Positions 9,941 through 63,379 of a DNA stretch of 64,000 nt are shown in pieces. Numbering within the stretch: position 1 is the first letter of the stretch; each line of letters begins with the position of its first letter. A program made the translations under genes and the position numbers. The DNA comes from Octopus sinensis (lineage: Eukaryota). The notes beneath the pieces were generated by a model that saw only the letters and a list, made by a program, of their open reading frames with translations, made no database searches and had not been told where the DNA came from. The stretch is taken from contig NW_021836131.1 of assembly GCF_006345805.1 (NCBI RefSeq), forward strand, positions 124,001 to 188,000, in the 5' to 3' direction.

Positions 9941-9946
9941 ATTTAG

Positions 9947-15103: not shown

Positions 15104-15317
15104 TTAACTGACTCACTCTCTAGTCCCCCTCGAGACACCCACATCCCCCCCCCCTCACACCCCCCCCTCACACCCCCTTCCTCCTCCACACCATTCCCGA
15201 CGACATCATCCGACTCAGGGACCAAATCGAGGCGAGACAGGGCAGTCGTGAGGCGGGTGGGGGGAATATTAAAAGTCTAGTCAAGACTATATCTCGGATG
15301 TAGTACTAACACTAATA

Positions 15318-30880: not shown

Positions 30881-31922
30881 TGTCACGGTCCAGTGGTGTG
30901 CCTATGCCGTAGGTGTGCCTCCATCGCAATTTTTTTCATAAAAATTTACTTGGTGGGTTATTTTTATTTGCTAAACCGATTTTTAAAATTTTTTTTCCAA
31001 ATTATCAACTATTTTTTTCCAATCTAGAGTCTTTTGGCATAAAACAACATAGAATGCAATTTTAAAACTAATTTATATTTTTATTATATAGATATTTTTT
31101 TGTAAAATTATAAAATACTATTAATTACTATTTTGTGTGGGCTTCAAGGTTACCCTCTGGAATGCTGAAACTGATTTAATCAAAAATTATCAACGATTCG
31201 GAGAATTCACGGAAGACATAGATCGATCGAAAAGAGTCCGCTATCGTCGGCTTTCAAAAATAATGATTTTTTTTGTTAGGGTTAGGGATAAGGTTAGGGA
31301 TAGGGAAAAGGTAGGGTTAGTGATAAGGTTGGGGTTAGGGATAAGGTTAGGGATAGGGATAAGGTGTGGTTAGGGTTAGGGATAAGGTTGTGGTTAGGGT
31401 TAGGGATAAGGTTGAAGTTAGGTTAGCTTTGGGATAAAGTTGCAATTTTATCATGCGACAAAAGTTGTGAAACAGAATGGCGACAACTATGAAGTTGAGA
31501 ATAATGAGGGGATTTTGGTAAAAAAAAACATTTTCACAATTAAAATAATTATAAAACATTCTTTTGTAATTTTAAATGATTAGGTTTTAGAGTTAATGCA
31601 TCCTTAGGGTTAGAGTTAGGGTCAATCCATCCTTATAAATTTTTTTTAATTAAAAAATTTTTTACTCAATTTTTTATATATATTAGTTATTAAAAACATA
31701 TTTTATAAAATCAGGAAATATATAAATATTTAAATTGTGATACTTTCAGTATTTTTATTGTGCTGTAATCACCGACATTGGAATATTTCCAATAAGTAAC
31801 AAAAAACTAAATAAATAATGATTTAGACTAATCGATAATAGATGCACCGATTTACAAAAAAAACGGAAAAAAATTGCGATGGAGGCACGCCTACGGCATA
31901 GGCACACTCGTGGACCGTGACA
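30881..31922. mobile_element. 1042-bp non-autonomous TIR element (TGTC...GACA termini, about 55-bp TIR, 5-bp TSD TTTTA); Ginger-like
   Basis: Left tgtcacggtcca..gtgtgcctatgccgtagg.gtgcctccatcgcaatttttt is inverted at the right end. tttta flanks both sides (30876-30880 and 31923-31927). The empty site is at 2643-2647. Confidence 0.95.
31275..31439 (+). repeat. Degenerate telomere-like tract (TTAGGG mixed with GATAAG) inside the MITE
   Basis: gttagggttagggataaggttagggatagggaaaag... with a smaller echo near 31604-31623. Confidence 0.9.
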
Positions 31923-34564
31923 TTTTACCTTCTTTTATACAAGAATTATTCACAAAGTTTCAACTAATACATCATTTTTGGTTGAAAATCCAGAAAAAGG
32001 TTTTTAATTTGTTTTAATAGTAAAGTAAATCGGAATAATTGTTTAATTGAATTTGAAAAAATATTCAAAGAAGCTTTGACTGTCTGGAAAATTGTTTTTT
32101 GTTAACAAAATATATTTTAGGCTGATTTACTTGAGAAATGCTTAATTTTATACTTTGAGAGCATTTCGGGTGATTCCTTGACATATTTTAAAGTTTCATG
32201 TTACGTAAAATATTTGTCAGGCTGTTGAGGTCCTGCAATCTTATGATCTGAGTCTCAAGTTTAAAGTTGTACAAAAACTTGTGCGTAGATTTGTCCCTGA
32301 TTTTAAAAAAGGCTTTTAAAGGTCGTTTTTATTAAATATTTTAAAAGATCCACTTTTAAAGGATTACATTGAGAAACAATATGCAATGATCCATAAATGC
32401 ATATTTGAGTTTGTTGAAAAAACTTTGATTCATATGAATTGTAATAATTTGGCAAAAATGAAATCGACAAAAGAAATTGGTTTTTCATTAGTTATTAAAG
32501 AAAATGAATTTAAGGAGTCGTTTTTATTATCGATGTATTTTCTGTATATTTAAAACATTATAGGTTGGAAGAACCGGTCTTTGGTGTTTTCAAATTAGTA
32601 GAGGGGTCATATTTATCAAGAAATTTAAAAAATTGAATAATTTTATAAATACTACGTTTATTGACAAACGTTTTGGTTCATGTTATACTACTGATGATAT
32701 CAACAGCATTTTTGGGGAATTAAAAAAGTAATTTTTGCTTTTTTGCTGATTTTATATTTATAAAATAAATTAAATATAGACAAATAAGAGATTGCAAAAA
32801 TGAGTATTTGGGGTCGACCAGGTTGTCTAAGCTCATTGCAGAAAACGTAATATCCAAAAATATGAATATCATTCGTTCTAAAATGGATAAATATGTTTAT
32901 ATATTAATTTATTTTAAAGTGTATTGATATGATTGGTGATGTTTCTTCGCCTCGGTCCTCAAAATTACAGAATCTACATATAGCCACTCTAAACTTTGTT
33001 TATGATTTACACTGTCTTATAAATAAGGTCAGATTTTCATTCGGATTATTTTATCTTTAGACTATTGAAAGTTTTAAAGATGATATTTCGAGTGAGGTTA
33101 TCTCGATTATACTAGCCGCTAATAAAGTATTATAATATTTATTATTTAGACACTGTATTTACACGTTGAAGAGGAGATAAGTATTTTAATGTCAATTTTT
33201 GCCAGTAAAGTAAGAATTATATTTATGGGAATGAAATTGTCTAATTATTCGAGGTTTTTGATTTGTTCTGAACTGTTTTTTAGTTTTAATGGAAAAATTG
33301 ATCCCGTCGTTCAGAAATCAGGTTTTATAAATCAACTAGAGGACTATTTTGAAGAAACTATTTCAGGAACACTTTCAATGTATAAATGTGGGCAAATTAT
33401 AAGCAAACAGTATAAATTATATATTTTTTATTTTAGACTTGAATTTTTTATTTCCTCCTTAGTAGACTTGTTTATTTGGAAAATAACCATGTGTTCTCGT
33501 CCTATCCAATCTTTCGGATTGCAAAAAATTCAAATAGATTTTTCTCGATTAGAATTGATCTTAAACTTGCTCATTTTGAATTTTAGTATCAGCACGTGTT
33601 CAAAAATGAAGGAATTTAATCTTTTTCGGTTTTATTTGTATTTTTAGAGTTATTAAGTTTGATTACAAATCAAATCGTCGAGGAAACAGTAATTAAAGTG
33701 GATTTTGATGGGATTGATGTTGAAAGTGCTAAAATAATTTCTTATCTGATTACATTTGGTCCAGAAGAAATGAATACTCCCTATAAAGTAATAATTATAT
33801 TTGTAAACAATAGATATCGATGATGAATGCTGAAGATTATTTAAATTTTGTGCAAATTAATTCGAATATGGAACATGTTCGTGGTTTGGTCAGGTTTTCG
33901 TGTCTATTGACGTTAAAGGATGTGCCTTGAAGATTATGTTCGCTACGTTCATCAACAAAATCTCAAAGAATATCATTTTATCTATCCTTCAATTAATAAT
34001 TTATTTCCTGAATTTCTTTAAAAATTATTTAATATTAAAATATTTTTTCAATTTTATTTTTAATTTTACTAGAGTTTGGTTTGGAGCTCTTACGAATACA
34101 CTTCACTCTTCAAAGAAGAACTTTTTTTAATGAGTTTTTTCTTGTTTGCTTGTTTCCAAGACCAATACTAAGGATAAAATACGTAATAAGAATTGTCTGG
34201 ATTATTTAATTATTTTTCAAATTTCGAAATATTGCTATTCTATTCAATGCCTTCCTACGTTTTTTAAAATATGAAATATAAAATTATGAATCTTCGACAT
34301 ATTTCTAAATTTATTATAGACCATAAAGAATATTTTTTTGAATCTTGATTTTATCGTGAAACAAATTTTGAAATATTGCCATTCTATTCAATGTCTTTCT
34401 ACGTTTTTTAATTATAACAACCAATTTAGATTGGGTTTATTTTTTGATGAAAATGGTTAACAGCTATCAATGCATAGAAATATAATAAGTTAGTCTTGTA
34501 TTTTATATAACTAAAAAATTTGAAAAATCTCATTTAAGAACAAAAGTAGATCAGTTTAAACGTT

Positions 34565-36859
34565 TTATTTTGAAATTTCGGTTTTTTCAGCGTATTTTTC
34601 TGGTTTTATAATTTTTATTTTACCATCGGGGTCGATTCTCTTCTATTTATTATTAATATTTAAAATAACTTACTTTTACATTATCACAGTTAATTTCAGT
34701 ACGGCCGCTAGGAAAATGAACAATTCTTGTACCCCCAGAGAGATCCCGAATAAAAGTATCATCATTTTGTATCATTATCTGTTTTCTGTCTTTATATATA
34801 AATTTAGAGCTTCTATCAGGAAATAATATGTCTGTTTCTCTATCTTTCCATCTTCGTTCTACTTGTCCACTTTGAACATTTGTATAGTGAGGCATTACTT
34901 TGCAAATGAGGTTATCTCCACACCACTTGGCAAAGTAATTTGAATTGATCCTGTTTCGGAGTAATAATAAACCTTCAGAATAGATATAAATTGTGATATT
35001 AACCACTTGTTTGTCTTTAAATTTGTGCTTTTCATCGCCATTAAAATAATGAATTGAATATGAGCTCCCATCGGCTTTGATAATTTTTTTAGTTCCGTTA
35101 GAAAAAGTGATTGCGTTAGATTTCGTTAGAAGCTGGTTGGAAGTGTGATCAATGGATTTATTTGCTTTATCACATAATTCAGTTTGTTTAATTGTATTCT
35201 TTTCTTGTGTTAAATCTAAAAATAAAGTAAAAAATTTACCTTTTTGATAGCGAAATCTTTCACAAATTTTTATTTCCTGTTTCAGTTCGTCATTTTGTTG
35301 CTCTAGAAAATCAATTCTGTCTTTTAGTCTTATCAAGCTAAAATTCCATCTTTTTTCTTTCGTTTTATAAATGTTTTGATTTTCTTCAATCTTTTAAATC
35401 TTAATTTAATTAAATACTTGGTGTTCAAGGTCTTCAATTTTTTGACGTTCTGATCTAATTGGGGTGTCTCGCTGTGTTTTAATCCAAGAATCAAATTGTT
35501 TTCTTTCCTTTCTATTTGAAATAATATTATTTTGTGAATACTTGATTTTATTCATTTCAGTTTCTTTGTAATTTTTTAATCGAAGCAACTCTGCGTCTCT
35601 CTCTTTTTCAAACATTGCGATTTCCCGTTTTAAACGACTCAGCTCCTGTTAAATAAACAATTTGTTCCACAAACTTGCTGTTTACTTCTTTTAATTAATT
35701 GAAGTTCGTCATTTGTCTTATTTAGTTTTTGCTGCTCGGTTTCCAGCAGTTCCATTTGTTCGATTAATTTTGTATCGTTTGCAACTATTTTTTTGGATTC
35801 AGGCTTATCATGCCGATGTTTTATAGATTTTTCGTCGTCGTCAATTTGTGGAAAAAAACGTTTCACAATAGCGGAAGAAGATTTCAGCTTCTGAATTTTT
35901 CTCATATCAGTCAGCGTAGTATCCTGATCACTTTGGCTTTCCAAACTGTTGCAATCGCTTGATGGCTCTTCGTTCTTTATTGAAACTGCCTTTTTGTGAT
36001 CACTGTAGTTCGAACTATTGTAATTTTTGACTGATATTTCTCTAGAAATCTAAAAAAATCAAATTAGATACAAATAACTCTGTCTTGAGTCATTTTATGA
36101 ATTTTTGAAGCTACGGATGGAGTCAATGATACGAATGATACACTATCCAATATATCTTCCATTGCTTCAAATTCTTTTAGATCCTTATATTAAAAATATA
36201 ATATTTACTTTTTGTATTTCATCTTTATCAGTTTCTGAAAACAAATTTAGAAATTTATTATATCAACCGTTAATACTCGAGATTTCATTTTTGGATTCGG
36301 TAAAATTATTAGAAGAACATGTTGAGTAATCACTTTTAGACGAAGGTTTTTTAATTTTGATGGGAGAGCTCTTTTTTCCCTCAAATCGTTTGAGACCTTC
36401 GCCTTTTTTTAGAAATGGATATTTTTTGGTTTTTGGAAATTGTTCTTGTTTATTTTGTTCTTTCTTTATTATTTAAAATTTTAATAAATAACTTTCAGTT
36501 CTTGTTCAATCATCTCTTCGAATGTTTTTGACGAGCCTTAAGAATTGAATCATGTTAGTTTTTACCAACTGCAATGTCGTCTATTTTGTTTTCTACGTTA
36601 GAATTGTCTACGATAATTTCTGATTTTTTGACTCCAGACGAGTCATCACTATGACTTAAATCTTCCTGGGTAATAATTTCTTAAATTTTCTAAATAAATA
36701 TAAACCTTTAAAAAAGTATTTTTGTCGGACATTTTGTAAAATATTTAATTGGTTTTTTTGTTCTGAAATAAGATCTTGTTCTACAATGTTGTCTTTTCCC
36801 ATTTGTTTCATATGATTGAATAAATTTGATTTATTCTCAGTTTCCATTCTATCATTCAT
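34565..36859 (-). CDS. CENPJ: Centriole assembly protein CENPJ/SAS-4 (CPAP), apparently full-length
   Basis: The ATG at 36859 (MNDRMETENK) is followed by a coiled coil (ELSRLKREIAMFEKERDAELLRLK) and the TCP10_C G-box, ending KRIDPDGKIKIIK. Micro-introns include 36680-36705. Confidence 0.85.
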
Positions 36860-48896: not shown

Positions 48897-49104
48897 CACA
48901 AAACCAATGAATAAATAAATTATTAAATATTTTGTTTATATGAAATTTTTTATATTTTTTATTTTCAATATTCATAAATTACATTATAAAGTGAAATGTT
49001 GTTTTTATATAAATCTGGATATTGAACTCAAAGAATCTAAACCATGTAAACTGCAAAATGTTGACGCACAAAGATGCTGTTATTCATTCATAATTTATAG
49101 TATA

Positions 49105-50119
49105 CAGTGAACCCTTGCAAATTGGCAATTTGTGCTACATACAAATTTTATGGCCAATTTGAAAAAATCAATACTTAGAAAAAAAAATAAACACGTTTAA
49201 ATTTTATTAAAAAATTCAATCCCTAATTCCTTTTTATTTGCTCTTTTTAATTTTGCTTTGTAATTTCTTATTGCAGTAATGAGCGAAATATAATTCTTAT
49301 TTTCTGCATTACAGTAAAGTTCCCTTTCTATTTCAGTTAATCTTCTTGCAATATCTTTTCCCTCGAGTGGATCAGGCTTATACGATTTAGAAATTTCTTT
49401 GAATTCTTCACGAAAGGAATTAATGTCAACTTCTCCATCAGTTCGCACCTCTCCATGTAATTTTAGCATTCTAAAAACCTGTCTCTTTTTGAATTTTGTC
49501 AAAAATCCATTAGAATTTTTAAAGTTACTAAGTTGTAACTCTTCGGCAAAATGCGCAGCCTTACACGATATTAAGGAATCATTCAAAAACCACCTAGAAA
49601 TTAGTTTTCAATTAATACCTTTAGATTCTATTGTATCCATCCATTCGATCAATTTTTTTTCAAGCGTAAGAAATTTTGGTTTGTGAGCAGCTTTAAACGA
49701 ATTTTGATAAATTTTCCAATCCAGGAAAATAGAATTTTTATTAAGCAGTAGATCGTCTTGCGGATCGTCTTATTGATCGTCTTTTTCGAGATCGTCTTGC
49801 GGAATAAATGTGAGAATGTGTCAGCCATAAGCTGAAACGAAACACCGTCATTTTCTTCCTTGTAGTTTATAATTTGTGTTTTTTCAAGAAAAGTGAACCG
49901 AGTATAACGTCCAGGAGAAATTTTATAAGACATATGATTAAAAAATAATTTATTTTCTGTTTTTTTTCTAAATAAAAAAAATTAATTCAAAAATTGTGGC
50001 CAATTTGAGAATTTGTTAATTTACTAAGAAAATTAATTTTTTTCTTGGTAAATTGTGAAAAAATGACCAATTCAAAAATTGGCTAATTTGCGAGGTCGCC
50101 AATTTGCGAGGGTTCACTG
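49105..50119 (-). mobile_element. pogo/Tigger internal-deletion derivative with intact TIRs and TA TSD
   Basis: TA|cagtgaacccttgcaaattggc ... gccaatttgcgagggttcactg|TA. HTH motifs (RFTFLEKTQII, FKNSNGFLTKFKKR) are present and the DDE core is deleted. Confidence 0.92.
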
Positions 50120-50569
50120 TATTTTAAAACTTCTAGGTCCTAGAAGTAAATAATGAAAAATTTTGTCAAGAAAAATATCCTAGTATAGAGAAAAAGTGAT
50201 ATTTATTTCATTCATTGATTCAATGACGTAAACCTAGATATACACTTGTTGTTTTTCAATCCATCAACACTTTGCAAGAACTGAAAGCGTATATAAAAAT
50301 CTGCAGTGCTAATAAGTCCAATCACGATAGAACTGTGTGCAACCAAAATAAATCCTCAAAGGATATATTTCAGAGAGTTTCGAATTAGGATTGCATATAA
50401 CGGTAAATTAATGAGTAAGTTTTTATAACATTGTGCCGTAATTGAATAATAGTTAATTTTTAGAGTGGAAAAAATCAAAAAGAAAATAACGTTAAGTTAG
50501 TAAAGGAAAATTAAAACACGTAGATAATAGTTATACGTAAAATCGAATTCTAAATTTATAATATTAGTA

Positions 50570-53200
50570 TTAATACTTTTCCATTTTGTTTGACATTACG
50601 AGGAAATAATTTTTAATTCTTACAATAAGAATAATACAGATGAAAATGATTGTAGCCAAAAATATTAAAACATATAGATTAGTTGTAGTTGTGCTCTTAG
50701 TGGTGGGGAACAAATTATTAAAACATATAAATCACTTGTAGTTGAGCTCTTAGTCGTGGGGACTAAAATATTAAAACATATAAATCACTTGTACTTGTGC
50801 TCTTAGTCGTGGGGACTAAAATATTAAAACATATAAATCACTTGTACTTGTGCTCTTAGTCGTGGGAACTAAAATATTAAAACATATAAATCACTTGTAG
50901 TTGAGCTCTTAGTCGTGGGGACTAAAATATTAAAACATATAAATCACTTGTACTTGTGCTCTTAGTCGTGGGGACTAAAATATTAAAACATATAAATCAC
51001 TTGTAGTTGAGCTCTTAGTCGTGGGGACTAAAATATTAAAATATATAAATCACTTGTAGTTGAGCTCTTAGTCGTGGGGACTAAAATATTAAAACATATA
51101 AATCACTTGTACTTGTGCTCTTAGTCGTGGGAACTAAAATATTAAAACATATAAATCACTTGTAGTTGAGCTCTTAGTCGTGGGGACTAAAATATTAAAA
51201 CATATAAATCACTTGTAGTTGAGTTCTTAGTCGTGGGGACTAAAATATTAAAACATATAAATCACTTGTAGTTGAGCTCTTAGTCGTGGGGACTAAAATA
51301 TTAAAACATATAAATCACTTGTACTTGTGCTCTTAGTCGTGGGAACTAAAATATTAAAACATATAAATCACTTGTACTTGTGCTCTTAGTCGTGGGAACT
51401 AAAATATTAAAACATATAAATCACTTGTAGTTGAGTTCTTAGTCGTGGGGACTAAAATATTAAAACATATAAATCACTTGTAGTTGAGCTCTTAGTCGTG
51501 GGGACTAAAATATTAAAACATATAAATCACTTGTACTTGTGCTCTTAGTCGTGGGAACTAAAATATTAAAACATATAAATCACTTGTAGTTGAGCTCTTA
51601 GTCGTGGGGACTAAAATATTAAAACATATAAATCACTTGTAGTTGAGCTCTTAGTCGTGGGGACTAAAATATTAAAACATATAAATCACTTGTACTTGTG
51701 CTCTTAGTCGTGGGGACTAAAATATTAAAACATATAAATCACTAGTAGTTGAGCTTTTAGTCGTGGGGACTAAAATATTAAAACATATAAATCACTTGTA
51801 GTTGAGCTCTTAGTCGTGGGGACTAAAATATTAAAACATATAAATCACTTGTAGTTGAGTTCTTAGTCGTGGGGACTAAAATATTAAAACATATAAATCA
51901 CTTGTACTTGTGCTCTTAGTCGTGGGAACTAAAATATTAAAACATATAAATCACTTGTACTTGTGCTCTTAGTCGTGGGAACTAAAATATTAAAACATAT
52001 AAATCACTTGTACTTGTGCTCTTAGTCGTGGGAACTAAAATATTAAAACATATAAATCACTTGTACTTGTGATCTTAGTCGTGGGAACTAAAATATTAAA
52101 ACATATAAATCACTTGTACTTGTGCTCTTAGTCGTGGGAACTAAAATATTAAAACATATAAATCACTTGTACTTGTGATCTTAGTCGTGGGAACTAAAAT
52201 ATTAAAACATATAAATCACTTGTACTTGTGCTCTTAGTCGTGGGAACTAAAATATTAAAACATATAAATCACTTGTAGTTAAGTTCTTAGTCGTAAGGAC
52301 TAAAATATTAAAACATATAAATCACTTGTACTTGTGCTCTTAGTCGTGGGAACTAAAATATTAAAACATATAAATCACTTGTACTTGTGCTCTTAGTCGT
52401 GGGAACTAAAATATTAAAACATATAAATCACTTGTACTTGTGCTCTTAGTCGTGGGAACTAAAATATTAAAACATATAAATCACTTGTAGTTGAGTTCTT
52501 AGTCGTGGGGACTAAAATATTAAAACATATAAATCACTTGTAGTTGAGCTCTTAGTCGTGGGGACTAAAATATTAAAACATATAAATCACTTGTAGTTGA
52601 GCTCTTAGTCGTGGGGACTAAAATATTAAAACATATAAATCACTTGTAGTTGAGCTCTTAGTCGTGGGGACTAAAATATTAAAACATATAAATCACTTGT
52701 ACTTGTGCTCTTAGTCGTGGGAACTAAAATATTAAAACATATAAATCACTTGTAGTTGAGTTCTTAGTCGTAGGGACTAAAATATTAAAACATATAAATC
52801 ACTTGTACTTGTGCTCTTAGTCGTGGGAACTAAAATATTAAAACATATAAATCACTTGTACCTGTGTTCTTAGTCGTGGGAACTAAAATATTAAAACATA
52901 TAAATCACTTGTAGTTGAGTTCTTAGTCGTGGGGACTAAAATATTAAAACATATAAATCACTTGTAGTTGAGCTCTTAGTCGTGGGGACTAAAATATTAA
53001 AACATATAAATCACTTGTACTTGTGCTCTTAGTCGTGGGAACTAAAATATTAAAACATATAAATCACTTGTAGTTGAGCTCTTAGTCGTGGGGACTAAAA
53101 TATTAAAACATATAAATCACTTGTAGTTGAGCTCTTAGTCGTGGGGACTAAAATATTAAAACATATAAATTACTAGTAGTTGAGCTTTTAGTCGTGGGGA
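50570..53200 (-). CDS. Predicted mucin-like membrane protein: 47 micro-exons of 27 nt, 47 introns of 26 nt and a terminal TM exon; native 5' end not found
   Basis: Unit intron gtgatttatatgttttaatattttag; exon (a)tc ccc acg act aag agc tca act aca = IPTTKSSTT. No variant gives a stop in this frame. The terminal exon 50709-50570 is exactly 47x53 bp away and reads PTTKSTTTTNLYVLIFLATIIFICIILIVRIKN. The last intron ends GT rather than AG. No transcript evidence. Confidence 0.7.
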
Positions 53201-53203
53201 CTA
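50657..53203. repeat. Tandem array of a 53-bp unit, about 48 copies, no indels
   Basis: Consensus ctaaaatattaaaacatataaatcacttgta[g/c]ttg[a/t]gctcttagtcgtggg[g/a]a, with no spacers. Confidence 0.99.
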
Positions 53204-53830
53204 GACTGTTGCTCGCTAGACTGTTGGGAGCGTATTTGGGTAGTTCCCCTGGGACTCCATCATATCCTGCAGCTCTTTTATTGTTCATACGGTGAAATGC
53301 TTCCAGGACCTCCGAGGGTGTTATTTCATTCAATAAGCCTCGCGGATGACCAATGAATGTGGGTGTATAAGTGTCATCTGTTTGGAGTTGTCTCTTGAAG
53401 TGGTCGGCGATTCGTGATACTTTATCTTCATCGTCCAATATCATGTGTTCTGATTCATCCCATATCGATATTTTGGTATTTCGTGAGCCTCGATTAAGTA
53501 ATCGGATGGCCATGAATATCTGGTTTCCAGGTGAGAGTCTTTCAATTTCAGTAACTTTATCGTCTAAGTATTTCATCTATAGTAGGCGTCCCCTGTCTCT
53601 AATTTCATGAAGGAGCCTGTTCAGTTTATTCTTTAGTTTTTTTTGGTTTCCATACCACAGTTTTCGATTCTCAGGCGGATGTCTCTTTTGTTTCTGACAT
53701 CTCTCTCAGTTTTGAGTCATGGTATATGTAATTGTTTGAGCGGTTACTCCTGTATCCGACAGTATCCTCCGCGGTGGAGACAATATCATTTTTGTCATCG
53801 CAGAAGTTACCGATCACTTGACGCAAAAAA
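53204..53830 (-). mobile_element. RTE-clade retrotransposon internal fragment abutting the array
   Basis: FIGHPRGLLNEITPSEVLEAFHRMNNKRAAGYDGVPGELPKYAP, the pre-RT region of RTE elements. Confidence 0.85.
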
Positions 53831-55212: not shown

Positions 55213-55936
55213 CAGTAAAGTTTCTCGAATCCGCCAATTTCGGGGATCGGCAAAATCTGGCGGATTCGAGAATTTGGCGGATTCGAGAGACTTATCGATT
55301 TTTTAATCCATTAATAATTTAAATTATTAAGCCAAAATAATTAATTAAAAACAAAAAAATCAGTAAGTTTCGACTTGTTTCTTCGTAGAGTTTGGATCAT
55401 TGAAGATCCAATGTTTTCAATATACTCAAGATTTTCTATATTAAAGAATTCTTCTTGATTATAGAACTCTTTTAATTTGTTTAAAGCGATAAAAGCCTCG
55501 TTAATGGTAACAACTTTCTGACTTTGTTCACACGGTTCTTCGCTAATTTCTTGTTCTATTTTTTCTGAATTATTTAATTCAAGTTCTTCACTTTCATTAT
55601 ATTCAATCTCAATATAAAGACTTTCTTCTAACGGATCAATAATATCCATTTTTTCCAGAATATTATCATAATTTTCAATTAAGGGATTTTCATAATTAAT
55701 ATTTTCATTGTTTTGAGTCCATTTTGCATGAATGAAACAATTTAAAATTAAGGAACTTTCTATTTTGTTCCAAGCATAATATGTAAATAATATTGAATCT
55801 TTTATGCTTAGTTGTTTGTGTGCAACATAGGGGTTTGTCCCAGCTTCAATTTTTTGAATTATATTAGAAAATTTTAGAGAGTTGAATTTACATTTATACG
55901 ATTTAATTATGCCCTGATCCATGGGCTGTAAGATCC
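55213..55936 (-). mobile_element. pogo/Tigger 3' half with one TIR, truncated by duplication B'
   Basis: ILQPMDQGIIKSYK...KLTDFF; terminus TA|cagtaaagtttctcgaatccgcc at 55213. Confidence 0.85.
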
Positions 55937-56561
55937 ATTTCATCACATCAAAAAATTTTATACTATTGAAATGTACGCTATGATCCATTAATTAGCGATA
56001 TTATGTTACTTTCCGGATTGACCAAATAAACAAATTTGGGCACATAAGAAAGTACAACTAAATACAAAACACATGTGGTTTTTTATCTATCATTTTTTAG
56101 TAATATAATATATTTTAAATATCGCAATATAAATAAACTATATTCAAAAATTAACTACATAATATTCGAGACTACAAAGTTAAATCAGCTAAGAATCATA
56201 TTATTAACTTGTGATTGATCAAAATTTATAATAGGGTCAAATCTCTATTGCGCGCCAAATTTTTTTAAAAAAATTGAAAATTTCTTTAGAAATTTTCTAT
56301 TGCTCGCCAAATTCTAAATCTCTTCAATTTTGAGAAAAACAATTTCACGAAGATCAATTAATCATCTTAGGCTTGATAAACAAAAAAAATACTTGATAGT
56401 TGATCCTTTTTTCTCAAGCAAAAAACGTCTATTCAATCTAACATATTCAACTATTTATAAAGAAGTAATGACATAAATGGAACACATCGAAATTCGTGGA
56501 TTCTTGGACGACAATTCTATTTTTTTGAAAGCGCAAAAAGTCGCCGATTTACATGGAATTA

Positions 56562-58303
56562 CAGTCCGACCCCCAAATGGGGCACCAAGTGCCCCAAAAT
56601 GCGGGGGTGCCCCAAAAACAGGGGTTTGTTATTTTTTTAAAAATTAAACCATTAATAAACATCAAAAAACATTTTTACTAAAATATTCAGTTATTTTCTT
56701 TTTATTTGTAGAGTTTTGTCTGATATTGTTCGTCAATTTCAGCCGAAAATCAAAAAAATCTCGGAGCATACTTGGTGCAACATTAGAAATTTTTTCTTCT
56801 AAATTGTTAAGCAGATCTTTTGTTTTTGCTACGACATTTTCACTATTTTCGGTTTCTGAATATGTATCATAAACATTATTGTTCATGTCTTCGCATTCTC
56901 CATCAATTGTTTCGTTAACAACTTGATCTAAATGTTCATCTGTTAGACAGTTTTTTGTTGCATAAGAATCACGGTTCCTGTCGATTTTCTTCCAACAATT
57001 AACAATACTTTTAGCATCTATTTTCTCCCATCCTTTTGAAATTAGCATCATAACCTGACGCAAATTTAATTTACCAATAGAATGTGTAAAATCGTTTTCG
57101 AAATCTTGAAAACATAAAAATTCCATTAAGAAAGAGGAATAATAATCTTTAAAAATCTTGATTATTCCCATATCCAAAGGTTGTAAATAGGGCGTTGTAT
57201 TTTTCGGCAAAAATAAAAATTCGATGTTCGAACATTCGGCAGTTTTATGGCATCCCGCATTGTCAAGTATTAATAATATTTTTCTGTTGTTTTTGCAAAA
57301 CGATTCATTTATAAGTGTAAGCCAACTCATAAAAGTCTTTCCAGTCATCCATGCATTTTGAGAAGATGAATACAATAACCCAAAATCTTGAACATCAAAA
57401 TTTTTTAGACACCGAGGTTTTTTATATTTTCCAATAATCAATGGATTAAGTTTTTCCCCGATTAAACTGCAGCATAGAAGAACAGTGAGTCTTTCTTTCC
57501 CTTGTTTATAACCAAAACACGGTTCGCCTTGTTCAACAAATGATTTTTGAGGAGTTCTTTTTATAAAAAGCGCAGTTTCATCACAATTAAATATATTCTC
57601 AGGTCCATATTTTAATACTTTCTGGTCATATTTTTCAAAATAATTTTTCACATAAGATAAATCACATGAAGCTTTTTCACCACATATTGACTTGAATTGA
57701 AGTTCATGCCGCAATTTAAATCTATCAAGCCACCCATTGGAAGCTTTAAAAGAAGTAAATCCAATTTTTGAAGCTGTAACTAAGGCAATTTTTTTCAAAA
57801 TAGGGCCTGAAATCGGAATTTTATCTACGCGTAGTCTTTGAAATATTTCAAAGACTTGATCATCAAATTTATCTTTATCGGCTTTAAATGTGTCATATTC
57901 CTCAGAAATAGTATTGCCGTGTTGCAAGAAAGGTACAATATTTCGTTTATTCTTGATATTGTTCCTTTACTTGTGTTGTACTTTTTCATTAGTTGCCTCT
58001 CAGATAAATTTTTCTTCAAAATTTCTTTAGCAATCTTCAATTTAGTTTCGTAATCCATAACCACAACAATAAAAATATAAATTGAAAATAAAACAAAAAA
58101 TAATTAATTTATTATAATTTTATTTTATTTTTAATTCCTTATAAATGATTTTATGGTGCCCCAAAAATTCCATAATTTTTTATCGATTTTTATTTTTTTC
58201 TGCCAAAATGTACTTTTGGAATAAAGTGCCCCAAATTGCGGGGGTGCCCCAAAATCCGAGGGTGCCCCACCCCTGGGGTCTGCCCCATTTTGGGGTCGGA
58301 CTG
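56562..58303 (-). mobile_element. Full-length 1742-bp pogo/Tigger transposon with TA TSD; transposase broken by a single -1 frameshift near 57945
   Basis: TIRs cagtccgacccc(c/a)aaatggggca. The empty site gaaatTActg is at about 9536 in copy B. Motifs: HTH (ETKLKIAK, FKASNGWLDRFK) and NCDETAL, ILDNAGCH, LQPLDMGII. Confidence 0.96.
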
Positions 58304-58744
58304 TACTGATTTCAAGGCTAGCAATGGCTGACTTTTTAAATTCAAAAAACGGAATAATATTAAGTTAAAAAGTTTTCGTGAAAGTTTTATATGACTAACG
58401 TAAACTTTAAGACGAAGTAATTGCACAAAATTACATTAATTGCTTTTATTTCAGTAATTTGCACAAAATTACATTAATTCTTGCTAAACAACCACAATTT
58501 TACAGTTTATGGATCAGGGAATCATCCGCTCATTTAAAGTAAACTTTAACAAATTTAAATTTGAGGCGATGTTAGACAAAATTGACAATGATTCACATAA
58601 AAAGCTGAATTTAAAAGACGGCCTTCTTTTTACGCATTTTGGACAGAACAATGTTACTTAACAAACAATTGCGAATTGTTTCAGGCATGGCAAATGGATT
58701 ATTATTAATAGCACGTACACAGAACCAAAGAAATGTTGAATTAG

Positions 58745-59483
58745 GTAAGGTCCCGTTTATGCCGCACGTTTAGAAATCTTGTTCACCAGGCGTCTCCATC
58801 GGGGTCTGCTTTGAGCATATACTCGTAGGTCTTCAAGGTCGTCAGCACATCCAAGTTTTCTTCCAATTCCGTTGAGATCCTTGTTTAGTGCAACAGGGAG
58901 AGTAACCCTGGGCCTTCCCCTGAACGGTGTTTTGTTGTTATTGTTAAAGTAATCATCCACTATCGTGTTTTCTGGTGTGTTTACGTCCAGCCTAAGTACG
59001 TGTCCAAACAGCCTTGATTCTATAATATCGACGTTTATTGGCACCGATCGTGTCACAGCGTATAATTTTCTGTTAGGAATCTTTTTTGGCCATCCTAGGC
59101 CCAGTAGATTGCGTAGTTGTTTTCTGTGAAACGTGTCCATTTTATGTAGTTCTGCCTCCATGACACCCTAGGTACCCAAGTTGTACATGAGTACTAGTTT
59201 TATATATGAGTTGTACAGCTTTAGCTTGAGGTTTGTTTTTTGAAGTTTTTAATGATTCCATATCTTTTGCATTTTCTTGTACACTGCAGAGGCTAAAACT
59301 CTCTGGAACATTATGTCCTCACTATCACCAAATAATGATCCCAATTTCCTTTTTTTCCTCCAATTTTCATCAATATATTTCGATTCCCTTGCGATTCTTA
59401 AAAGTTCGATCTTTTCTTGATTAACGTGCAAACACCATCTCTCGAATTCGTCCGGAATTCTCTTCAAAACAGATGCAAGTTCA
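58745..59483 (-). mobile_element. RTE 3' fragment (duplicate of 9947-10681)
   Basis: ORFs 58757-59161 and 59249-59467 match the RTE C-terminus. The RT core is removed by a deletion. Confidence 0.88.
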
Positions 59484-59888
59484 TTATTCTTTGCCTTGAC
59501 TTGTAATCTTGAAAAATAAATATATGTTGTGGATACGTATTCTTCATGTCATCGGTTATATAAAGATTTAACATTGTTCTGTTTCCTGTTACTTTCTTAT
59601 AACGCTATATCTTTTAGATTTTTCTAAAACATTAATAAACATTTTTATCGAAGATCAGAAGAATATGGTATCGTTCTTTATTTACCAAATATTCAATTAA
59701 AAAATTTACTTGTATAGTAAATTATCGCGTTTTTATATATTTTATGACTGCTGAAACTTACACAAATATAAGCGTTAGCTGATTCTTATTCTTGAAATTA
59801 CATGCAAACTAATCTAAGCGCTACTCGAATATAAGTCTTATCAATTTTATATTTTTAATTTTTTTGGAATTATTAAAAAACCAATGAA

Positions 59889-60275
59889 GTGGAGAAATTT
59901 CACAAATACGACCTCCTTGCAAACGAACTGTCGGCTCTCTATGAAGCAAAAGTGAAGATTATTCCAATTGTCTTGACATGGGATGGAGATGTCTCAAAGT
60001 TCTTTAAAAGTCATATGGACAAGTTATCCATTGAAGAAAGAACGAAGACATACATCCAGTCCGTTGTGCTGAAGAGGACGCTAGAGAGTATGCTTATCGA
60101 CCACAGACATGGGATGAAGGTAGACAACGAGAAGTACGCCTCTGCCGCCAATCAACTTGCGGAGCTGGCATGTCGTGAGGACACTCAATTGAATAAATTC
60201 ATTGACGCAGAAATAGAGAATGAAAGAAAGTTTATGGAAAACTCTTCTTCTAAGCGAAGAAGAGAAATCACTTAA
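59889..60275 (+). mobile_element. RLE-type non-LTR 3' fragment (duplicate of 12585-12971)
   Basis: EKFHKYDLLANEL...IIPIVLTWDG. Confidence 0.7.
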
Positions 60276-60618
60276 GATCTGGATTTTTAATTAGCTAGTT
60301 TCACGTGATTGTTTTCCTTGCTACATGTTCTTTAGTATTAGAAAACCAATATAACTTTCAGCAAATATAAGTTTAAGGAAAATCTATTTTTTTGAATGCT
60401 TCATTTTTGCAATCTTTTGATAGTGCCATTAATAAGCTATTTAAAAACTATTTAGTATAAAAATAAAAATATTTATTGAACCGAAAAAAATCAGAAAAGA
60501 AATCCCATGAAATAGAATTTTGTATAAGTATTGGGCTGAGAGAATATTTCAGATAATTGTGTTTGTACCTCCTTTAGGGTGGGCTATTTCGATATCGTTT
60601 AAAGAGTTTCGCCGTTTG

Positions 60619-61150
60619 TTATGTCCTGTTCATTATGTTCCCATTATATAGTAAATTCATGCTGCTGTGCAGGATGTGGAGGGGGGAGTGCTCGCAGAGG
60701 AAGAGTGAGTAGATCTGGTAGGCCAGCACGGGCAGTCCGTAGGGAAAGTGTGTAGGCTGGAAATGGGTGAAACAGTCCACGAGGAGTGCGAATAGCTGAG
60801 TGAGCACACCATTTACCAATTCACTCGCCCTTCCTCTTCTCAGCACATATCCCAAAAATATGTAACTCAGTGTCGGGTTGTGCAGCACTGTCTTGTAGTT
60901 GAACATGTCCAGTCTCATCTCCTCACTCCTCCACGTCCTCCAAGACCTGTACGCAAATGACTATACTCTCCACACACTTCACCTTCCTACCCACTCCATC
61001 CACTTGCTCCACGTCGCCTACATTTACATTTCTTATTACTTTCCGGGTACATCTCACTTCCTATCGCCACTGACATTCTCTTCTTGCACGCCTGTCTTCG
61101 TTGACCCGATCCACTAAACATCCTCCACTGCGTCTCGACCGCAATTTATT
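60619..61150 (-). CDS. Duplicate of the unidentified GC-rich coding region (13315-13820)
   Basis: 99-aa ORF, 27 bp longer than in copy B. Confidence 0.4.
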
Positions 61151-61643
61151 TGTGTTATTTACCGTACCAAGAATAATGCTAATCAGTCCTCATTTATTAT
61201 TAACTAATATTCAATCTATTTTATTGTTATTCCTGTTTTGTTCAGACTCCCCTTTTATAATCCCGTCCTTCTATGCAGAGGATCGACTCCACCAACCAAC
61301 CTGATTCTCTCCATAACAAAGTATGCTCTCTGGACACCAAGTACTCTAATATTTACATAATGGAACGAGACCAAATATCAAAATTCTAATAAACAGCTGT
61401 TCCGTTTTCCAATGCCCTAAAAATTCACTAAAGCCGGAAATGTAGTCAACTGGCATAAAGAGCAGAGTGTTGACTGAAAAGAAGACTTGTTTGCTTCCAA
61501 AAAGACGCACAATCCACGAACCCGATTAGTGGCAGTCACAAGGTGTGTCGGAATAAGGATAATTATTAATTATATTTGTGTAACTACAAACAAACATGTT
61601 GGGCGGTGTGCCCGGAATACAATAAAATACATTCTGAGCAAAC

Positions 61644-62612
61644 ATTATCGGGTAGCAACCAATGACGGAGATTTTACTCAACTTTCGTACACTGATCAGA
61701 GAAAGTAATTTTATTGATAGTCGCAGTGTTATTTCATGTTGAGAAAAAAGGTTAGTCAAAAACTGTGTAGTTTTAGAAATTATGATAAGCTCTAAATATC
61801 AATGAATGATAAGCTCTAAAAATAGAGTTCTTTCCCAACGTCCTTTTGCGGAATGGGGCTTGCCAACAATTCATATTTTGCACACAAGGCTAAATATGAC
61901 ATCAACAAGTTGTCCTACAAAAAAGCCCTTTGCAAAATCAAAAAATCCAAAAAGAAGCTGCGCCTAAAAATATTGCGAAGAGAAGGTCGAGGAGTGCTGG
62001 AGAGAGTGCCCGAGGGACAGAGTGAGGGGACATCCGAGGAAGTAGTAGTGCAACAATGTGAGGAGGGATTAGAACGAGTGCCTGAGGGTGTTCCCGAGGG
62101 AGTGCTGGAGAGAGTGCCCGAGGGATAGAGTGAGGGGACATCCGAGGAAGTAGTAGTGCAACAATGTGAGGAGGGATTAGAACGAGTGCCTGAGGGTGTT
62201 CCCGAGGGAGTGCTAAAGAAAGTGCCCGAATGGAATAGTGAAGGAGTGTGCACTGGAGAGTGAAGAAGTAATAGTGGAAGGAGCGTATTCAGCCCGAGAT
62301 TGCGAAGTGAGGGCGAAGGAGGGTTGCACTTTCGGGTTCACATTGGTGATGAACGAGGACAAGCACCTCATCGCCAACGTCATTGCCAATTCTCCGGCGG
62401 CTGACGCGGGTGTGCGGGAGGGGGACATTGTGGTGCAGGTGAACGACGTGAATGTGGAGAAGATGGAGCACGAGGAGGTGGTCGAGCTGATAAAAGAGAG
62501 GGAAGGGAGTGTGAGTCTGCTGGTGGTGGACGAGTGTGCGTATCAGTACTTCTTTGACAGGAAATTGACTATTTCGAGTGAGTGCGTCAAACATGTCACC
62601 AACTTTGGTTGA
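61644..62612 (+). pseudogene. NHERF-like tandem-PDZ duplicate: PDZ1 largely replaced, linker expanded with an in-frame stop
   Basis: Sequence 61685-61890 replaces 14331-14467. The extra 108-bp unit carries gga tag. PDZ2 is intact (62238-62612). Confidence 0.8.
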
Positions 62613-63379
62613 TTAACTGACTCACTCTCGAGACACCCACTTCCCCCCTCACATCCCACGCCCTCACATCCCCTTCCTCCTCCACACCATTCCCGACGAC
62701 ATCATCCGACTCAGGGACCAAATCGAGGCGAGACAGCGCAGTCGTGAGGCGGGTGGGGGGGAATATTAAAAGTCTAGTCAAGACTATATCTCGGATGTAG
62801 TACTAACGCTAATATTTTCCTTCAATAGAAAATTTTTCAGCAAAAGAAATGGGATTTGATGGAAACATGGCTTTTTTCACAGAACCCCCATATTATTTCA
62901 ATATGAATTATAGTCAGGAAAACGATTTAATTCCGCCATCTTATGAATCTGAATTATCTTCGAAATCATTTTTTTCTTTAAAAAATCCCCCATTTTATGG
63001 ATTGGGAGAAAAGAAGACATATGATTCTAATATTGAAGAAATTGATTCTCTTCAAATGAACAACAACTAGTTTATTTGCTAATTTATGTAACTCGGTTTT
63101 AGATATACTCATTATTTATTAATTTTTTAGTTCTTTTAAAATTAGGCACCAATTATTTTCAAATAATTATTTTGTAAAACTTGATTTAGATACGATCCGG
63201 CTTAGAATTAAAAGATTAATGCTTATTTTTTATTTCTATAATCGTCAACTTAATTCTATTAAGATAAAAATTTTATTTATGACTAAAAATTTGCATCTAT
63301 GATTTGTGAATAAATTGTTTGTAAGAATTACATTTTATTGATTATAAAAAAGGAGAAAATAAAAAAGTCCTGGAAGAAG

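What the first reader, a model, noticed from the sequence alone, without database searches (positions are those of the whole stretch)
50570..53203. A 'satellite' that is a 47-unit micro-exon/micro-intron array encoding a hidden mucin
Seen: on the minus strand each 53-bp unit splits into a 26-nt GT...AG segment (gtgatttatatgttttaatattttag, e.g. 53173-53148) and a 27-nt segment. The 26-nt part has the size and AT-rich style of the confirmed introns in this window, such as the actin intron 7625-7649. Joining the 27-nt parts gives IPTTKSSTT or IPTTKSTST 47 times (423 aa, about two-thirds Ser/Thr). Variants in this frame are often synonymous (atc/att, aag/aaa, aca/act, ccc/cct, acg/acc) or swap Ser and Thr, and none is a stop. 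One alternative frame has TAA in every unit and the other gains TAA at about 52277. A 48th exon lies exactly in register (53200-50709 = 47x53) and continues into LYVLIFLATIIFICIILIV-RIKN, a TM helix with basic residues after it. Established: Ser/Thr/Pro repeats plus one C-terminal TM helix is the membrane-mucin architecture. Inference: this is a surface glycoprotein gene that ORF finders miss and repeat maskers would hide.
Basis: partly seen in the sequence, partly recalled or inferred. Interest (0 to 1): 0.95.

Follow-up and report, generated by a model that had tools for sequence, protein, structure and literature searches.

The report
Spliceable 53-bp repeat beside membrane anchor
A 53-base tandem repeat in what looks like a dicyemid (octopus-kidney parasite) genome can be read as 47 tiny exons and introns encoding a mucin-like stalk that runs into a membrane anchor. 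Its front end is cut off by a dead jumping gene, so it is more likely an amplified remnant of a broken gene than a working hidden gene.

Summary
The array is real: 48 units of 53 bp at 50657-53203, 95% identical, with no indels. On the minus strand each unit splits into a 27-nt GC-richer part and a 26-nt AT-rich GT...AG part that resembles this genome's 23-31-nt introns. Joining the 27-mers gives an open Ser/Thr/Pro-rich frame.

- Only 46 of 47 "introns" end in AG. The 47th ends in GT, so the in-register link to the tail is non-canonical. One alternative 29-nt GT-AG intron would make the link.
- Only 37 of 47 peptides are the two quoted.
- There is no excess of silent changes (4 synonymous, 7 non-synonymous; p about 0.35).

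The strongest new support is the tail LYVLIFLATIIFICIILIV. It is the only TM-grade hydrophobic stretch in all six frames of the 64 kb.

The strongest evidence against an intact gene:
- The array's 5' edge is a rearrangement breakpoint with a decayed LINE ORF2 fragment.
- No signal-peptide-like start lies within 2.8 kb upstream.
- The neighbourhood is transposon debris and segmental duplications.

Best reading (0.45): a 53-bp cassette from the 3' end of a broken single-pass membrane-protein gene was amplified, and its intron-like parse is largely incidental. Main rival (0.33): a truncated copy of a true exon+intron array, like schistosome SmPoMuc. Transcript data would decide between them.

The parts
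50657..53203 (-). 53-bp tandem array: 47 regular units (53200-50710) plus one degenerate unit 48 (50709-50657)
   Evidence: TRF gives period 53, 48 copies, 95% matches and 0 indels. There are no copies elsewhere in the window.
53174..53200 (-). First 27-nt GC-richer ('exon-like') segment. The same segment recurs every 53 nt down to 50736-50762. It encodes I/V-PTTK-S/N/I-xxT in the open frame.
   Evidence: GC is 48% here against 15% in the 26-mer. Ten variable positions lie in this half.
53148..53173 (-). First 26-nt AT-rich GT...AG ('intron-like') segment. It recurs every 53 nt, with 46 GT..AG copies down to 50763-50788.
   Evidence: Size and composition match the 23-31-nt introns of the window and published dicyemid/myxobolid intron features (PMC13644364). 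Only 2 positions vary.
50710..50735 (-). 47th AT-rich segment, GTGATTTATATGTTTTAATAATTTGT. The donor is kept and the AG acceptor is lost.
   Evidence: 3 mismatches. It breaks the in-register junction to unit 48.
50696..50724 (-). Alternative 29-nt GT-AG segment (GTTTTAATAATTTGTTCCCCACCACTAAG). It is the only one of six canonical donor/acceptor pairs at the array end that reaches the TM frame.
   Evidence: Enumeration. This was found post hoc and carries no evidential weight; it only shows that a canonical path exists.
50657..50709 (-). Degenerate unit 48. The 27-mer TCCCCACCACTAAGAGCACAACTACAA is intermediate between the two main subtypes. The 26-mer homologue CTAATCTATATGTTTTAATATTTTTG lacks both GT and AG and is read through as TNLYVLIFL.
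   Evidence: Four of the 7 differences of units 47/48 from the core 26-mer fall on the splice dinucleotides (p=0.013; p=0.044 after conditioning on base class).
50621..50677 (-). TM-like hydrophobic segment LYVLIFLATIIFICIILIV
   Evidence: Mean KD over 19 residues is 3.32. It is the only such window at 2.8 or above in six frames of the whole window. P=1.7e-4 for a random position and frame. For the unique 13 residues, P=2.25e-5.
50570..50620 (-). Basic/short tail RIKNYFLVMSNKMEKY plus TAA stop (50572-50570)
   Evidence: Translation. GC3 of the tail is about 0.29, which is host-like (counted by hand; compare).
53211..53774 (-). Decayed, 5'- and 3'-truncated LINE ORF2 fragment (the linker between endonuclease and RT). 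Its reading frame runs into the IPTTK frame (ORF 53148-53576).
   Evidence: It is 95.9% identical over 566 bp to L001 10185-10750. It is 93% identical at protein level to P0122, a 435-aa protein with RVT_1. It is homologous to the 983-aa EN+RT protein P0124. The intact copy continues ...NSLAS-FFAHILNKAF, whereas the window continues ...NSLAS-NSLVPTTK.
53201..53210 (-). 10-nt templated duplicate AACAGTCTAG at the LINE/array junction. It supplies the 'TAG' in front of the first unit.
   Evidence: Alignment.
49102..50122 (.). Context: a 1-kb DNA transposon remnant with 25-bp terminal inverted repeats and a Tc5/pogo HTH ORF, about 450 bp downstream of the stop

Best explanation
The locus is the 5'-truncated remnant of a single-pass membrane-protein gene on the minus strand. 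A 53-bp piece of it has been tandemly amplified into a minisatellite.

The piece covers two parts of the old coding sequence:
- the last 27 nt of a Ser/Thr/Pro-rich juxtamembrane segment (...PTTKSxTT);
- the first 26 nt of the transmembrane helix (S/T-N-LYVLIFL).

Ancestral state (inferred): 27-mer, 26-mer and unique flank formed one exon reading ...PTTKSTTT-TNLYVLIFLATIIFICIILIV-RIKNYFLVMSNKMEKY*.

Breakpoint (shown): a rearrangement joined this sequence to the middle of a dead LINE, with a 10-nt templated insertion ending in CTAG.

Amplification (inferred): slippage or unequal exchange between the TAG at that junction and the T(T/A)G 53 nt downstream started the array. Unequal crossing-over then expanded and homogenised it to 47-48 units with two interspersed subtypes and degenerate edge units.

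On this reading the intron look of the 26-mer is largely a by-product:
- It is AT/T-rich because it once encoded hydrophobic residues in a 30%-GC genome.
- Its GT is the last two bases of an in-frame AGT Ser codon.
- Its AG is the TAG of the unit junction.

If the remnant is transcribed, the dicyemid spliceosome needs little more than GT, AG and some A residues, so it might well remove the 26-mers. There is still no intact gene here: no 5' exon, no signal peptide, and no canonical in-register last junction.
For: - The array is real and behaves like a minisatellite: constant period, two interspersed subtypes, recurring A-A'-B blocks and degenerate edge units.
- A coding origin for the 3' end is supported. 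The tail is the single most hydrophobic ORF segment in the 64 kb and sits in frame and in register with the Ser/Thr frame. An open 27-mer with at least 6 of 9 Ser/Thr has P about 0.01.
- The 5' edge is a breakpoint. LINE homology (95.9% to L001) stops at 53211, a 10-nt duplicate follows, then unit 1. The LINE fragment itself is decayed, with a W-to-stop change before the Met at 53576.
- No signal-peptide-like start lies within 2.8 kb upstream.
- The in-register last acceptor is GT.
- There is no excess of synonymous change: 4 against 7, p=0.35-0.39.
- The exon-versus-intron difference in variable sites (10/27 against 2/26) largely disappears once G/C sites (7/13 against 2/4) are separated from A/T sites (3/14 against 0/22, p=0.05).
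- The fixed codons CCC, ACG, AAG and AGC are minor codons in host-like ORFs, and GC3 is 0.44-0.56 against 0.19-0.38.
- An in-frame NGT codon at one of the five slots that would give a 20-32-nt 'intron' is expected about 25% of the time. Some GT..AG/open-frame parse exists for 61% of random 53-mers.
- The neighbourhood is transposon debris and segmental duplications, with a similarly truncated actin fragment.
Against: - All 46 internal units keep GT and AG, and there is not a single indel in 2.5 kb. Both are expected if splicing and frame matter, though with only about 13 substitution events the power is low.
- The 26-mer is 85% AT. Only 2.7% of random units give so intron-like a parse.
- Differences of the two edge units from the core fall preferentially on the splice dinucleotides (4 of 7, p=0.013). 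The change in unit 48 that removes the AG also turns the in-frame TAG into Leu, as if that copy had been made coding.
- Introns more homogeneous than exons is exactly the pattern reported for genuine exon+intron tandem arrays (SmPoMuc and spider silk; PMC2576457).
- My weighting of this scenario against the exon+intron-cassette scenario rests on rough priors, not on a decisive test.
Confidence: 0.45

Rival explanations
1. This is a true exon+intron cassette array, but this copy is truncated. In the parent gene or gene family, the Ser/Thr-rich stalk of a type I membrane protein is built from 27-nt exons separated by 26-nt introns. That would be a miniature of the schistosome SmPoMuc architecture. 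The last cassette copy has lost its splice sites and is read through as the start of the TM helix. The copy in this window lost its 5' exons in the rearrangement with the LINE and is decaying, with the last acceptor mutated.
For: - There are 46 of 46 perfect GT...AG 26-mers of typical intron size and composition, with a yTnAy-like TTAAT 8 nt before the AG (PMC13644364).
- There are no indels.
- The frame is open with about 78% Ser/Thr/Pro, and the variants mostly keep Ser/Thr.
- The TM tail is in frame and in register.
- Edge-unit changes concentrate on the splice dinucleotides.
- The intron half is more homogeneous than the exon half, as in SmPoMuc and silk genes.
- There is a precedent for a 27-bp exon per 9-aa mucin repeat, with up to about 20 genomic repeats (PMC2576457).
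- The parse is 4-5 times more expected under this model than under the by-product model.
Against: - It needs a new kind of gene architecture: 47 consecutive 27-nt exons.
- It needs an evolutionary start in which a frame-breaking 53-bp duplication inside a working exon was rescued by creation of an AG.
- There is no selection signal and codon usage is atypical.
- No related protein was found. This is weak evidence, because the actin and ORF look-ups found no copy of the window's own proteins, and apparent dicyemid DNA is present only as a contig filed under Octopus sinensis.
- No second copy exists in the window.
Confidence: 0.33
2. This is an intact, expressed membrane mucin gene, exactly: 47 micro-exons are spliced together and joined to a 48th exon carrying the TM helix, giving a surface O-glycoprotein.
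For: - All the evidence listed for the cassette model applies.
- An ATG at 53576 is in frame with the array through the LINE remnant.
- One canonical 29-nt intron could connect the array to the TM frame.
Against: - The sequence directly upstream is a decayed LINE ORF2 fragment joined at a breakpoint.
- The in-frame N-terminus MKYLDDKVTEIERL... is not a signal peptide, and none lies within 2.8 kb.
- Without a signal peptide, a C-terminal TM followed by 16 residues would be tail-anchored. The Ser/Thr region would then be cytosolic and not mucin-type glycosylated.
- The in-register acceptor is GT. Five of six canonical alternatives end in early stops.
Confidence: 0.05
3. This is a purely non-coding satellite. 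The Ser/Thr frame, the GT..AG parse and the hydrophobic tail are all coincidences of base composition.
For: - 61% of random 53-mers can be parsed.
- Two of three frames are open in the consensus.
- T-rich DNA tends to encode hydrophobic residues.
- The context is rich in transposons.
Against: - The tail is the only TM-grade segment in six frames of 64 kb and lies exactly at the array end, in the matching frame.
- P=2e-5 for the unique 13 residues, or 1.6e-4 even among windows that are at least 45% T.
- At least 6 of 9 Ser/Thr has P about 0.01.
- An intron-grade AT content has P about 0.03.
Confidence: 0.1

Closest known systems
Schistosoma mansoni polymorphic mucins (SmPoMuc): tandem genomic repeats that each carry a 27-bp exon 2
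   Same: - A 27-nt exon encodes a 9-residue Ser/Thr/Pro repeat.
- Exon plus flanking intron is the unit of a genomic tandem repeat (up to about 20 copies; 1 to about 55 repeats in cDNA).
- Two repeat subtypes are intermingled.
- Intronic parts are highly homogenised.
- The organism is a parasite.
(PMC2576457)
   Different: - The SmPoMuc repeat unit is about 1 kb (27-bp exon plus about 1 kb of intron with a microsatellite). Here it is 53 bp with a 26-nt 'intron'.
- SmPoMuc has a 22-aa signal peptide exon, 13 further exons, and proven transcripts and glycoprotein. Here the 5' end is a LINE breakpoint and expression is untested.
- No sequence similarity was tested or claimed.
Ultra-short spliceosomal introns of Dicyema japonicum and myxobolid myxozoans
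   Same: - Length is 26 nt (published medians are 22-27).
- Signals are minimal: GT(a)...AG.
- A residues lie upstream of the AG.
- Composition is AT-rich.
(PMC13644364; window introns)
   Different: - Known examples interrupt ordinary exons (mean 198 bp in D. japonicum; PMC6736024).
- None is reported as part of a tandem 53-bp unit.
- Removal from RNA is not shown here.
Ordinary minisatellites or satellites that arise by slippage at microhomology and spread by unequal crossing-over, including those inside pseudogenes
   Same: - Head-to-tail array with a constant period.
- Interspersed subtypes and locally repeated multi-unit blocks.
- Degenerate edge units.
- Located at a rearrangement junction in transposon-rich, duplicated DNA.

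   Different: - The unit is sharply bipartite (48% against 15% GC).
- It mimics exon+intron.
- It keeps an open Ser/Thr-rich frame that leads into a TM-grade ORF.
Schistosome micro-exon genes (MEGs)
   Same: Very short symmetric exons whose lengths are multiples of 3, encoding parasite proteins (PMC10526429 abstract).
   Different: - MEG exons are all different.
- MEG introns are long, up to 5 kb.
- The products are secreted and have signal peptides.
Spider flagelliform silk genes and human 'introns from tandem arrays'
   Same: - Genomic tandem repeats made of exon+intron, with introns more homogenised than exons (as summarised in PMC2576457).
- Tandem repeats that carry their own splice sites (Zhuo et al. 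2007; seen only as a citation).
   Different: - The units are hundreds of bp to kb long.
- I could not read the primary papers.

Membership tests
Ultra-short spliceosomal intron (dicyemid/myxobolid type) | GT at the 5' end and AG at the 3' end | tested here: met
   46 of 47 26-mers meet it. The 47th ends in GT, and the unit-48 homologue has neither GT nor AG.
Ultra-short spliceosomal intron (dicyemid/myxobolid type) | Length about 20-30 nt, AT-rich, A residues a few nt upstream of the AG | tested here: met
   The 26-mer is 26 nt and 85% AT, with TTAAT 8 nt before the AG. Window introns are 23-31 nt. Published description: PMC13644364.
Ultra-short spliceosomal intron (dicyemid/myxobolid type) | Absent from mature RNA | not testable with these tools
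   No transcript data could be reached. The unit and the spliced junction were absent from metagenome and genome contig scans.
Membrane-bound mucin / SmPoMuc-like surface glycoprotein | N-terminal signal peptide | tested here: not met
   No Met-plus-hydrophobic start lies within 2.8 kb upstream on the minus strand. The nearest weak candidate is at 56074, between pogo ORFs. The upstream flank is a LINE remnant.
Membrane-bound mucin / SmPoMuc-like surface glycoprotein | Tandem Pro/Thr/Ser-rich repeats | tested here: met
   The conceptual product has 47 nonapeptides, each 6/9 Ser/Thr plus Pro. This holds only if the 26-mers are removed.
Membrane-bound mucin / SmPoMuc-like surface glycoprotein | TM helix and cytoplasmic tail joined in frame to the repeats | tested here: inconclusive
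   The TM-grade segment is real. The in-register junction lacks AG. One of six canonical alternatives (29 nt) restores the frame.
Membrane-bound mucin / SmPoMuc-like surface glycoprotein | Expression and O-glycosylation | not testable with these tools
   No data. No protein with this repeat exists among 5.8 billion clusters, but the window's own proteins were not found in those collections either.
Minisatellite / satellite DNA | Head-to-tail copies of constant period, with subtypes and degenerate ends | tested here: met
Minisatellite / satellite DNA | No coding constraint on the variation | tested here: inconclusive
   4 synonymous against 7 non-synonymous changes and no new stops. This is indistinguishable from neutral, but only 11 events were available.
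Schistosome micro-exon genes (MEG) | Short symmetric exons separated by long introns; a secreted product | tested here: not met
   Exon length of 27 fits. The introns would be 26 nt, and no signal peptide was found.
Non-LTR retrotransposon (LINE) ORF2, for the upstream flank | Homology to the EN-RT linker and RT of LINE ORF2 proteins | tested here: met
   210 homologues were found. The best, P0122, is 93% identical and carries RVT_1. P0124 is a 983-aa EN+RT protein. Pfam alone does not recognise the fragment.

The most novel reading that the evidence does not exclude
Dicyemids, the animals with some of the shortest introns, build the Ser/Thr-rich stalks of surface proteins from tandem cassettes of one 27-nt exon plus one 26-nt intron. 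Some '53-bp satellites' in their genomes would then be coding arrays that ORF finders, repeat maskers and standard spliced aligners all miss. This locus would be one member of that class, perhaps a truncated one. It would be the most compact exon-intron repeat known. The last cassette copy would have been exonised to form part of the TM helix.
Probability: 0.35. Interest if true: 0.8.

Novelty: new member of a known kind. Interest (0 to 1): 0.5.

Why it matters
If the cassette reading is right, genomes with 20-30-nt introns can hide whole protein-coding repeat domains inside what looks like satellite DNA.
- Gene counts and surface-protein repertoires of dicyemids, and perhaps of myxobolids, would be underestimated.
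- A parasite mucin built like SmPoMuc but 20 times more compact would be a notable case of convergent architecture.
- It would also be a natural test of how short consecutive exons and introns can be.

If the remnant reading is right, the locus is still a useful warning. With splice signals reduced to GT...AG, a large fraction of tandem repeats can be 'spliced' on paper (61% in my simulation). Such parses need transcript evidence.

Independently, the work indicates that a 959-kb contig of the Octopus sinensis reference assembly, and at least one RefSeq protein on it, may be dicyemid rather than octopus.

Tried and rejected
- **Conceptual protein search.** I searched the 468-aa conceptual product against 5.8 billion protein clusters. 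The only hit was a low-complexity mayfly protein. The result is uninformative, because none of the window's own proteins was found either.
- **LINE fragment identification.** The word-indexed search, PDB, Pfam and tblastn within the window all found nothing. The exhaustive HMMER search did find it.
- **DNA scans.** Scans for the genomic unit and for the spliced junction in metagenome and prokaryote genome contigs gave 0 hits.
- **Intron calling by ORF joining.** At a threshold of 35 codons this was too noisy to give a length distribution. The 50-codon version gave a usable but small set, so I built no PWM.
- **Rejected: the 27-mer is LINE-derived.** The intact LINE continues with unrelated sequence.
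- **Rejected: the 26-mer was a genuine intron before the tail exon.** Removing it puts the unique flank in the frame SYNHFHLYYSYCKN*, which loses the TM-grade reading.
- **Rejected: a larger transposon with inverted ends encloses the array.** The two flanks share no inverted repeats.
- **Rejected: a parse on the plus strand.** None was found.
- **Could not read:** Zhuo et al. 2007.
Full report
**1. The observation**

Tandem Repeats Finder reports one large array at 50659-53203: period 53, 48.0 copies, 95% matches, no indels.

Read on the minus strand in register from 53200, every unit has two parts:
- a 27-nt segment with 48% GC, in two main subtypes of 16 units each plus seven minor types;
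- a 26-nt segment with 15% GC, GTGATTTATATGTTTTAATATTTTAG, identical in 44 of 47 units.

Neither half occurs anywhere else in the 64 kb.

Joining the 27-mers gives three frames:
- one fully open frame, (I-P-T-T-K-x-x-x-T)n;
- one frame open except for a TAA in unit 18;
- one frame with a stop in every unit.

- The 47th 26-mer (50735-50710) ends in GT, not AG. There are therefore 46 canonical GT...AG segments, and the '48th exon' has no acceptor in register.
- The quoted example at 53173-53148 begins GTA, not GTG.
- Only 37 of 47 nonapeptides are IPTTKSSTT or IPTTKSTST. The rest carry N, I, G or L.
- The first six residues of the proposed TM helix are encoded by the degenerate copy of the 'intron' in unit 48.
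- The silent changes are not in excess (see section 3).

**2. The host genome**

The actin fragment at 7406-8261 has introns of 25, 28 and 29 nt. ORF-joining finds further AT-rich GT..AG segments of 23-31 nt. The window is about 30% GC.

Among animals, such introns are reported only for myxobolid myxozoans and Dicyema japonicum. In those, the splice signals are reduced to GTa...AG plus a few A residues (PMC13644364).

The exhaustive HMMER search then tied the window to dicyemids:
- The sequence just upstream of the array is 93% identical to a 435-aa RVT_1 protein annotated in Octopus sinensis (XP_029654334.1).
- It is 95.9% identical over 566 bp to contig VCDQ01004456.1 of that assembly.
- That contig carries a filament-like gene with a 27-nt intron, which is dicyemid-like rather than cephalopod-like.
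- O. sinensis is the host from which D. japonicum was sequenced (PMC6736024).

I therefore treat the window as dicyemid DNA. The species is not established.

**3. Is the exon/intron parse more than chance?**

By size, composition and termini, the 26-mer cannot be told apart from this genome's introns. With such minimal signals that is a weak test. In simulation:
- 61% of random 53-mers from the window admit some GT..AG parse of 20-32 nt with an open frame;
- 14% do so with an 'intron' of at least 75% AT;
- 2.7% do so at 84% AT or more.

The variation does not show selection:
- The other two frames give 2:9 and 3:8.

Variable sites are concentrated in the 27-mer (10/27 against 2/26, p=0.019). 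Most changes hit G/C sites, and the 26-mer has only four of those. G/C sites vary at 7/13 against 2/4, and A/T sites at 3/14 against 0/22 (p=0.05).

The four invariant codons CCC, ACG, AAG and AGC are each the minor codon in host-like ORFs. GC3 is 0.44-0.56 against 0.19-0.38.

**4. The tail**

- LYVLIFLATIIFICIILIV (50677-50621) has a mean Kyte-Doolittle value of 3.32.
- It is the only stop-free 19-residue window at 2.8 or above in all six frames of the 64 kb.
- A random position and frame gives an open stretch this hydrophobic with P=1.7e-4.
- The 13 residues encoded by the unique flank alone have P=2.25e-5, or 1.6e-4 among windows that are at least 45% T.
- The segment lies exactly at the array end, in the frame that continues the Ser/Thr frame through unit 48. 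It is followed by RIK... and a stop 16 codons later.
- An open 27-mer with at least 6 of 9 Ser/Thr has P about 0.01.

I conclude that 27-mer, 26-mer and flank are, or were, coding sequence for a Ser/Thr-rich juxtamembrane segment, a TM helix and a short basic tail.

The TM reading requires the 26-mer of unit 48 to be read through. If it were spliced out, the flank would read SYNHFHLYYSYCKN*. The 26-mer sequence was therefore coding first and intron-like second.

**5. The 5' side**

LINE homology runs from 53774 to 53211 and stops abruptly:
- The intact relative continues ...NSLAS-FFAHILNKAF...(RT).
- The window continues with a 10-nt duplicate of the preceding LINE sequence (AACAGTCTAG) and then unit 1.

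This is the signature of a repair junction. The array's left edge is a rearrangement breakpoint.

Further points on the 5' side:
- The LINE piece is itself decayed, with W changed to a stop just before the Met at 53576.
- Its frame runs into the IPTTK frame, but its N-terminus is not a signal peptide.
- No Met-plus-hydrophobic start exists within 2.8 kb upstream.
- Beyond it lie another LINE 3' part, pogo-like transposase ORFs (DDE_1, HTH_Tnp_Tc5) and a segmental duplication (8860-15318 roughly equals 55936-62815).
- Downstream is a 1-kb element with 25-bp inverted ends.

So there is no intact gene here.

**6. The last junction**

Starting from exon 47, six canonical GT-AG combinations are possible. 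Five end in early stops. One, a 29-nt intron at 50724-50696, gives ...TTSDLY|STTTTNLYVLIFLATIIFICIILIVRIKN...*. One success in six is no better than chance. It only shows that the link is not impossible.

**7. Weighing the explanations**

Pure coincidence (a non-coding satellite) is unlikely given section 4.

An intact membrane mucin is unlikely given sections 5 and 6.

Two scenarios remain.

*(C) Amplified remnant.* A 53-bp piece of a broken gene was amplified as a minisatellite.
- The AG is the TAG of the unit junction, and the first TAG comes from the LINE-derived insertion.
- The GT is the end of an in-frame AGT Ser codon.
- The AT-richness reflects hydrophobic codons.
- An in-frame NGT codon at a usable spacing is expected about 25% of the time.

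*(B) True cassette.* The cassette evolved as exon+intron in a working gene, and this is a truncated paralogue. For B:
- all 46 internal GT/AG pairs are intact, and there are no indels;
- 4 of the 7 differences of the edge units fall on the splice dinucleotides (p=0.013, or 0.044 after conditioning);
- the change that removes the AG in unit 48 also converts TAG to Leu;
- introns are more homogeneous than exons, as in SmPoMuc and spider silk genes (PMC2576457).

B needs an unprecedentedly dense architecture and a rescued frame-breaking duplication. C needs only common processes. My estimates are:
- C about 0.45;
- B about 0.33;
- intact gene about 0.05;
- pure coincidence about 0.10.

These figures are inference, not measurement.

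**8. Comparison with known systems**

The closest analogue is SmPoMuc of Schistosoma mansoni. It has:
- a 22-aa signal peptide;
- a 9-aa Ser/Thr/Pro repeat, each copy encoded by a 27-bp exon;
- that exon embedded in a genomic repeat of about 1 kb, with up to about 20 copies and two intermingled repeat types.

The present array would be the same design at 53 bp. It fails the membership tests that could be run for a mucin gene: the signal peptide is not met, and the joined TM is inconclusive. Its expression is untested.

It fully meets the descriptive criteria of a minisatellite.

**9. Verdict**

- The inference of a hidden, working surface-mucin gene is not supported at this locus.
- The narrower idea that the repeat is coding-derived and spliceable is supported and cheaply testable with existing dicyemid RNA data.
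- Interest is 0.5.

Noticed in passing
window 53211-53774; L001 (GCA_006345805.1 contig VCDQ01004456.1, 502691-523998): A LINE fragment of this tiny-intron genome is 96% identical to a 959-kb contig of the Octopus sinensis reference assembly. That contig carries a gene with a 27-nt intron. The RefSeq protein XP_029654334.1 '[Octopus sinensis]' therefore probably comes from a dicyemid parasite (contamination of the host assembly). Less likely, a LINE is shared between host and parasite.
   Followed up: partly
window 1-7403 vs 28243-36685; 8860-15318 vs 55936-62815: There are two large segmental duplications, at 97-98% and 89-98% identity. The array lies in the 19-kb stretch between the second copies. 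The corresponding stretch between the first copies is only 1.4 kb.
   Followed up: partly
window 7406-8261 (+): The actin gene is only a 3' fragment (residues about 119-375, three tiny introns). It starts within 3 nt of the duplication boundary at 7403, and no N-terminal actin exons exist anywhere in the window. It is probably a pseudogene fragment.
   Followed up: yes
window 31275-31413: An interstitial, degenerate TTAGGG-type telomere-like array (about 23 hexamers). It lies inside the roughly 1-kb insertion (30880-31922) that interrupts the second copy of the first duplication.
   Followed up: no
window 61991-62229 and 14469-14697 (+): A 108-bp tandem repeat (2.2 copies) lies inside a GC-rich ORF encoding GVLERVPEG-type repeats, upstream of a PDZ-like segment. 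It is present in both copies of the second duplication.
   Followed up: no
window 16731-17789 (+); 56662-57927 and 55341-55988 (-); 49102-50122: An apparently intact 352-aa ORF that looks Tc1/mariner-like by eye (not tested against Pfam). Pogo/Tigger-like transposase ORFs with DDE_1 and HTH_Tnp_Tc5 domains. A 1-kb element with 25-bp terminal inverted repeats.
   Followed up: partly
window units with AAC at codon 6 (e.g. 52935-52909, 52511-52485): The commonest non-synonymous variant (AGC to AAC, Ser to Asn, 8 units) creates N-S-T or N-L-T sequons in 7 units. This would matter only if the array is translated into the secretory pathway.
   Followed up: no
window 55218-55293: A 76-bp imperfect palindrome (79% self-complementary) and a perfect 20-bp one at 55311-55330. 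Both lie between the LINE RT remnant and the pogo-like ORF.
   Followed up: no
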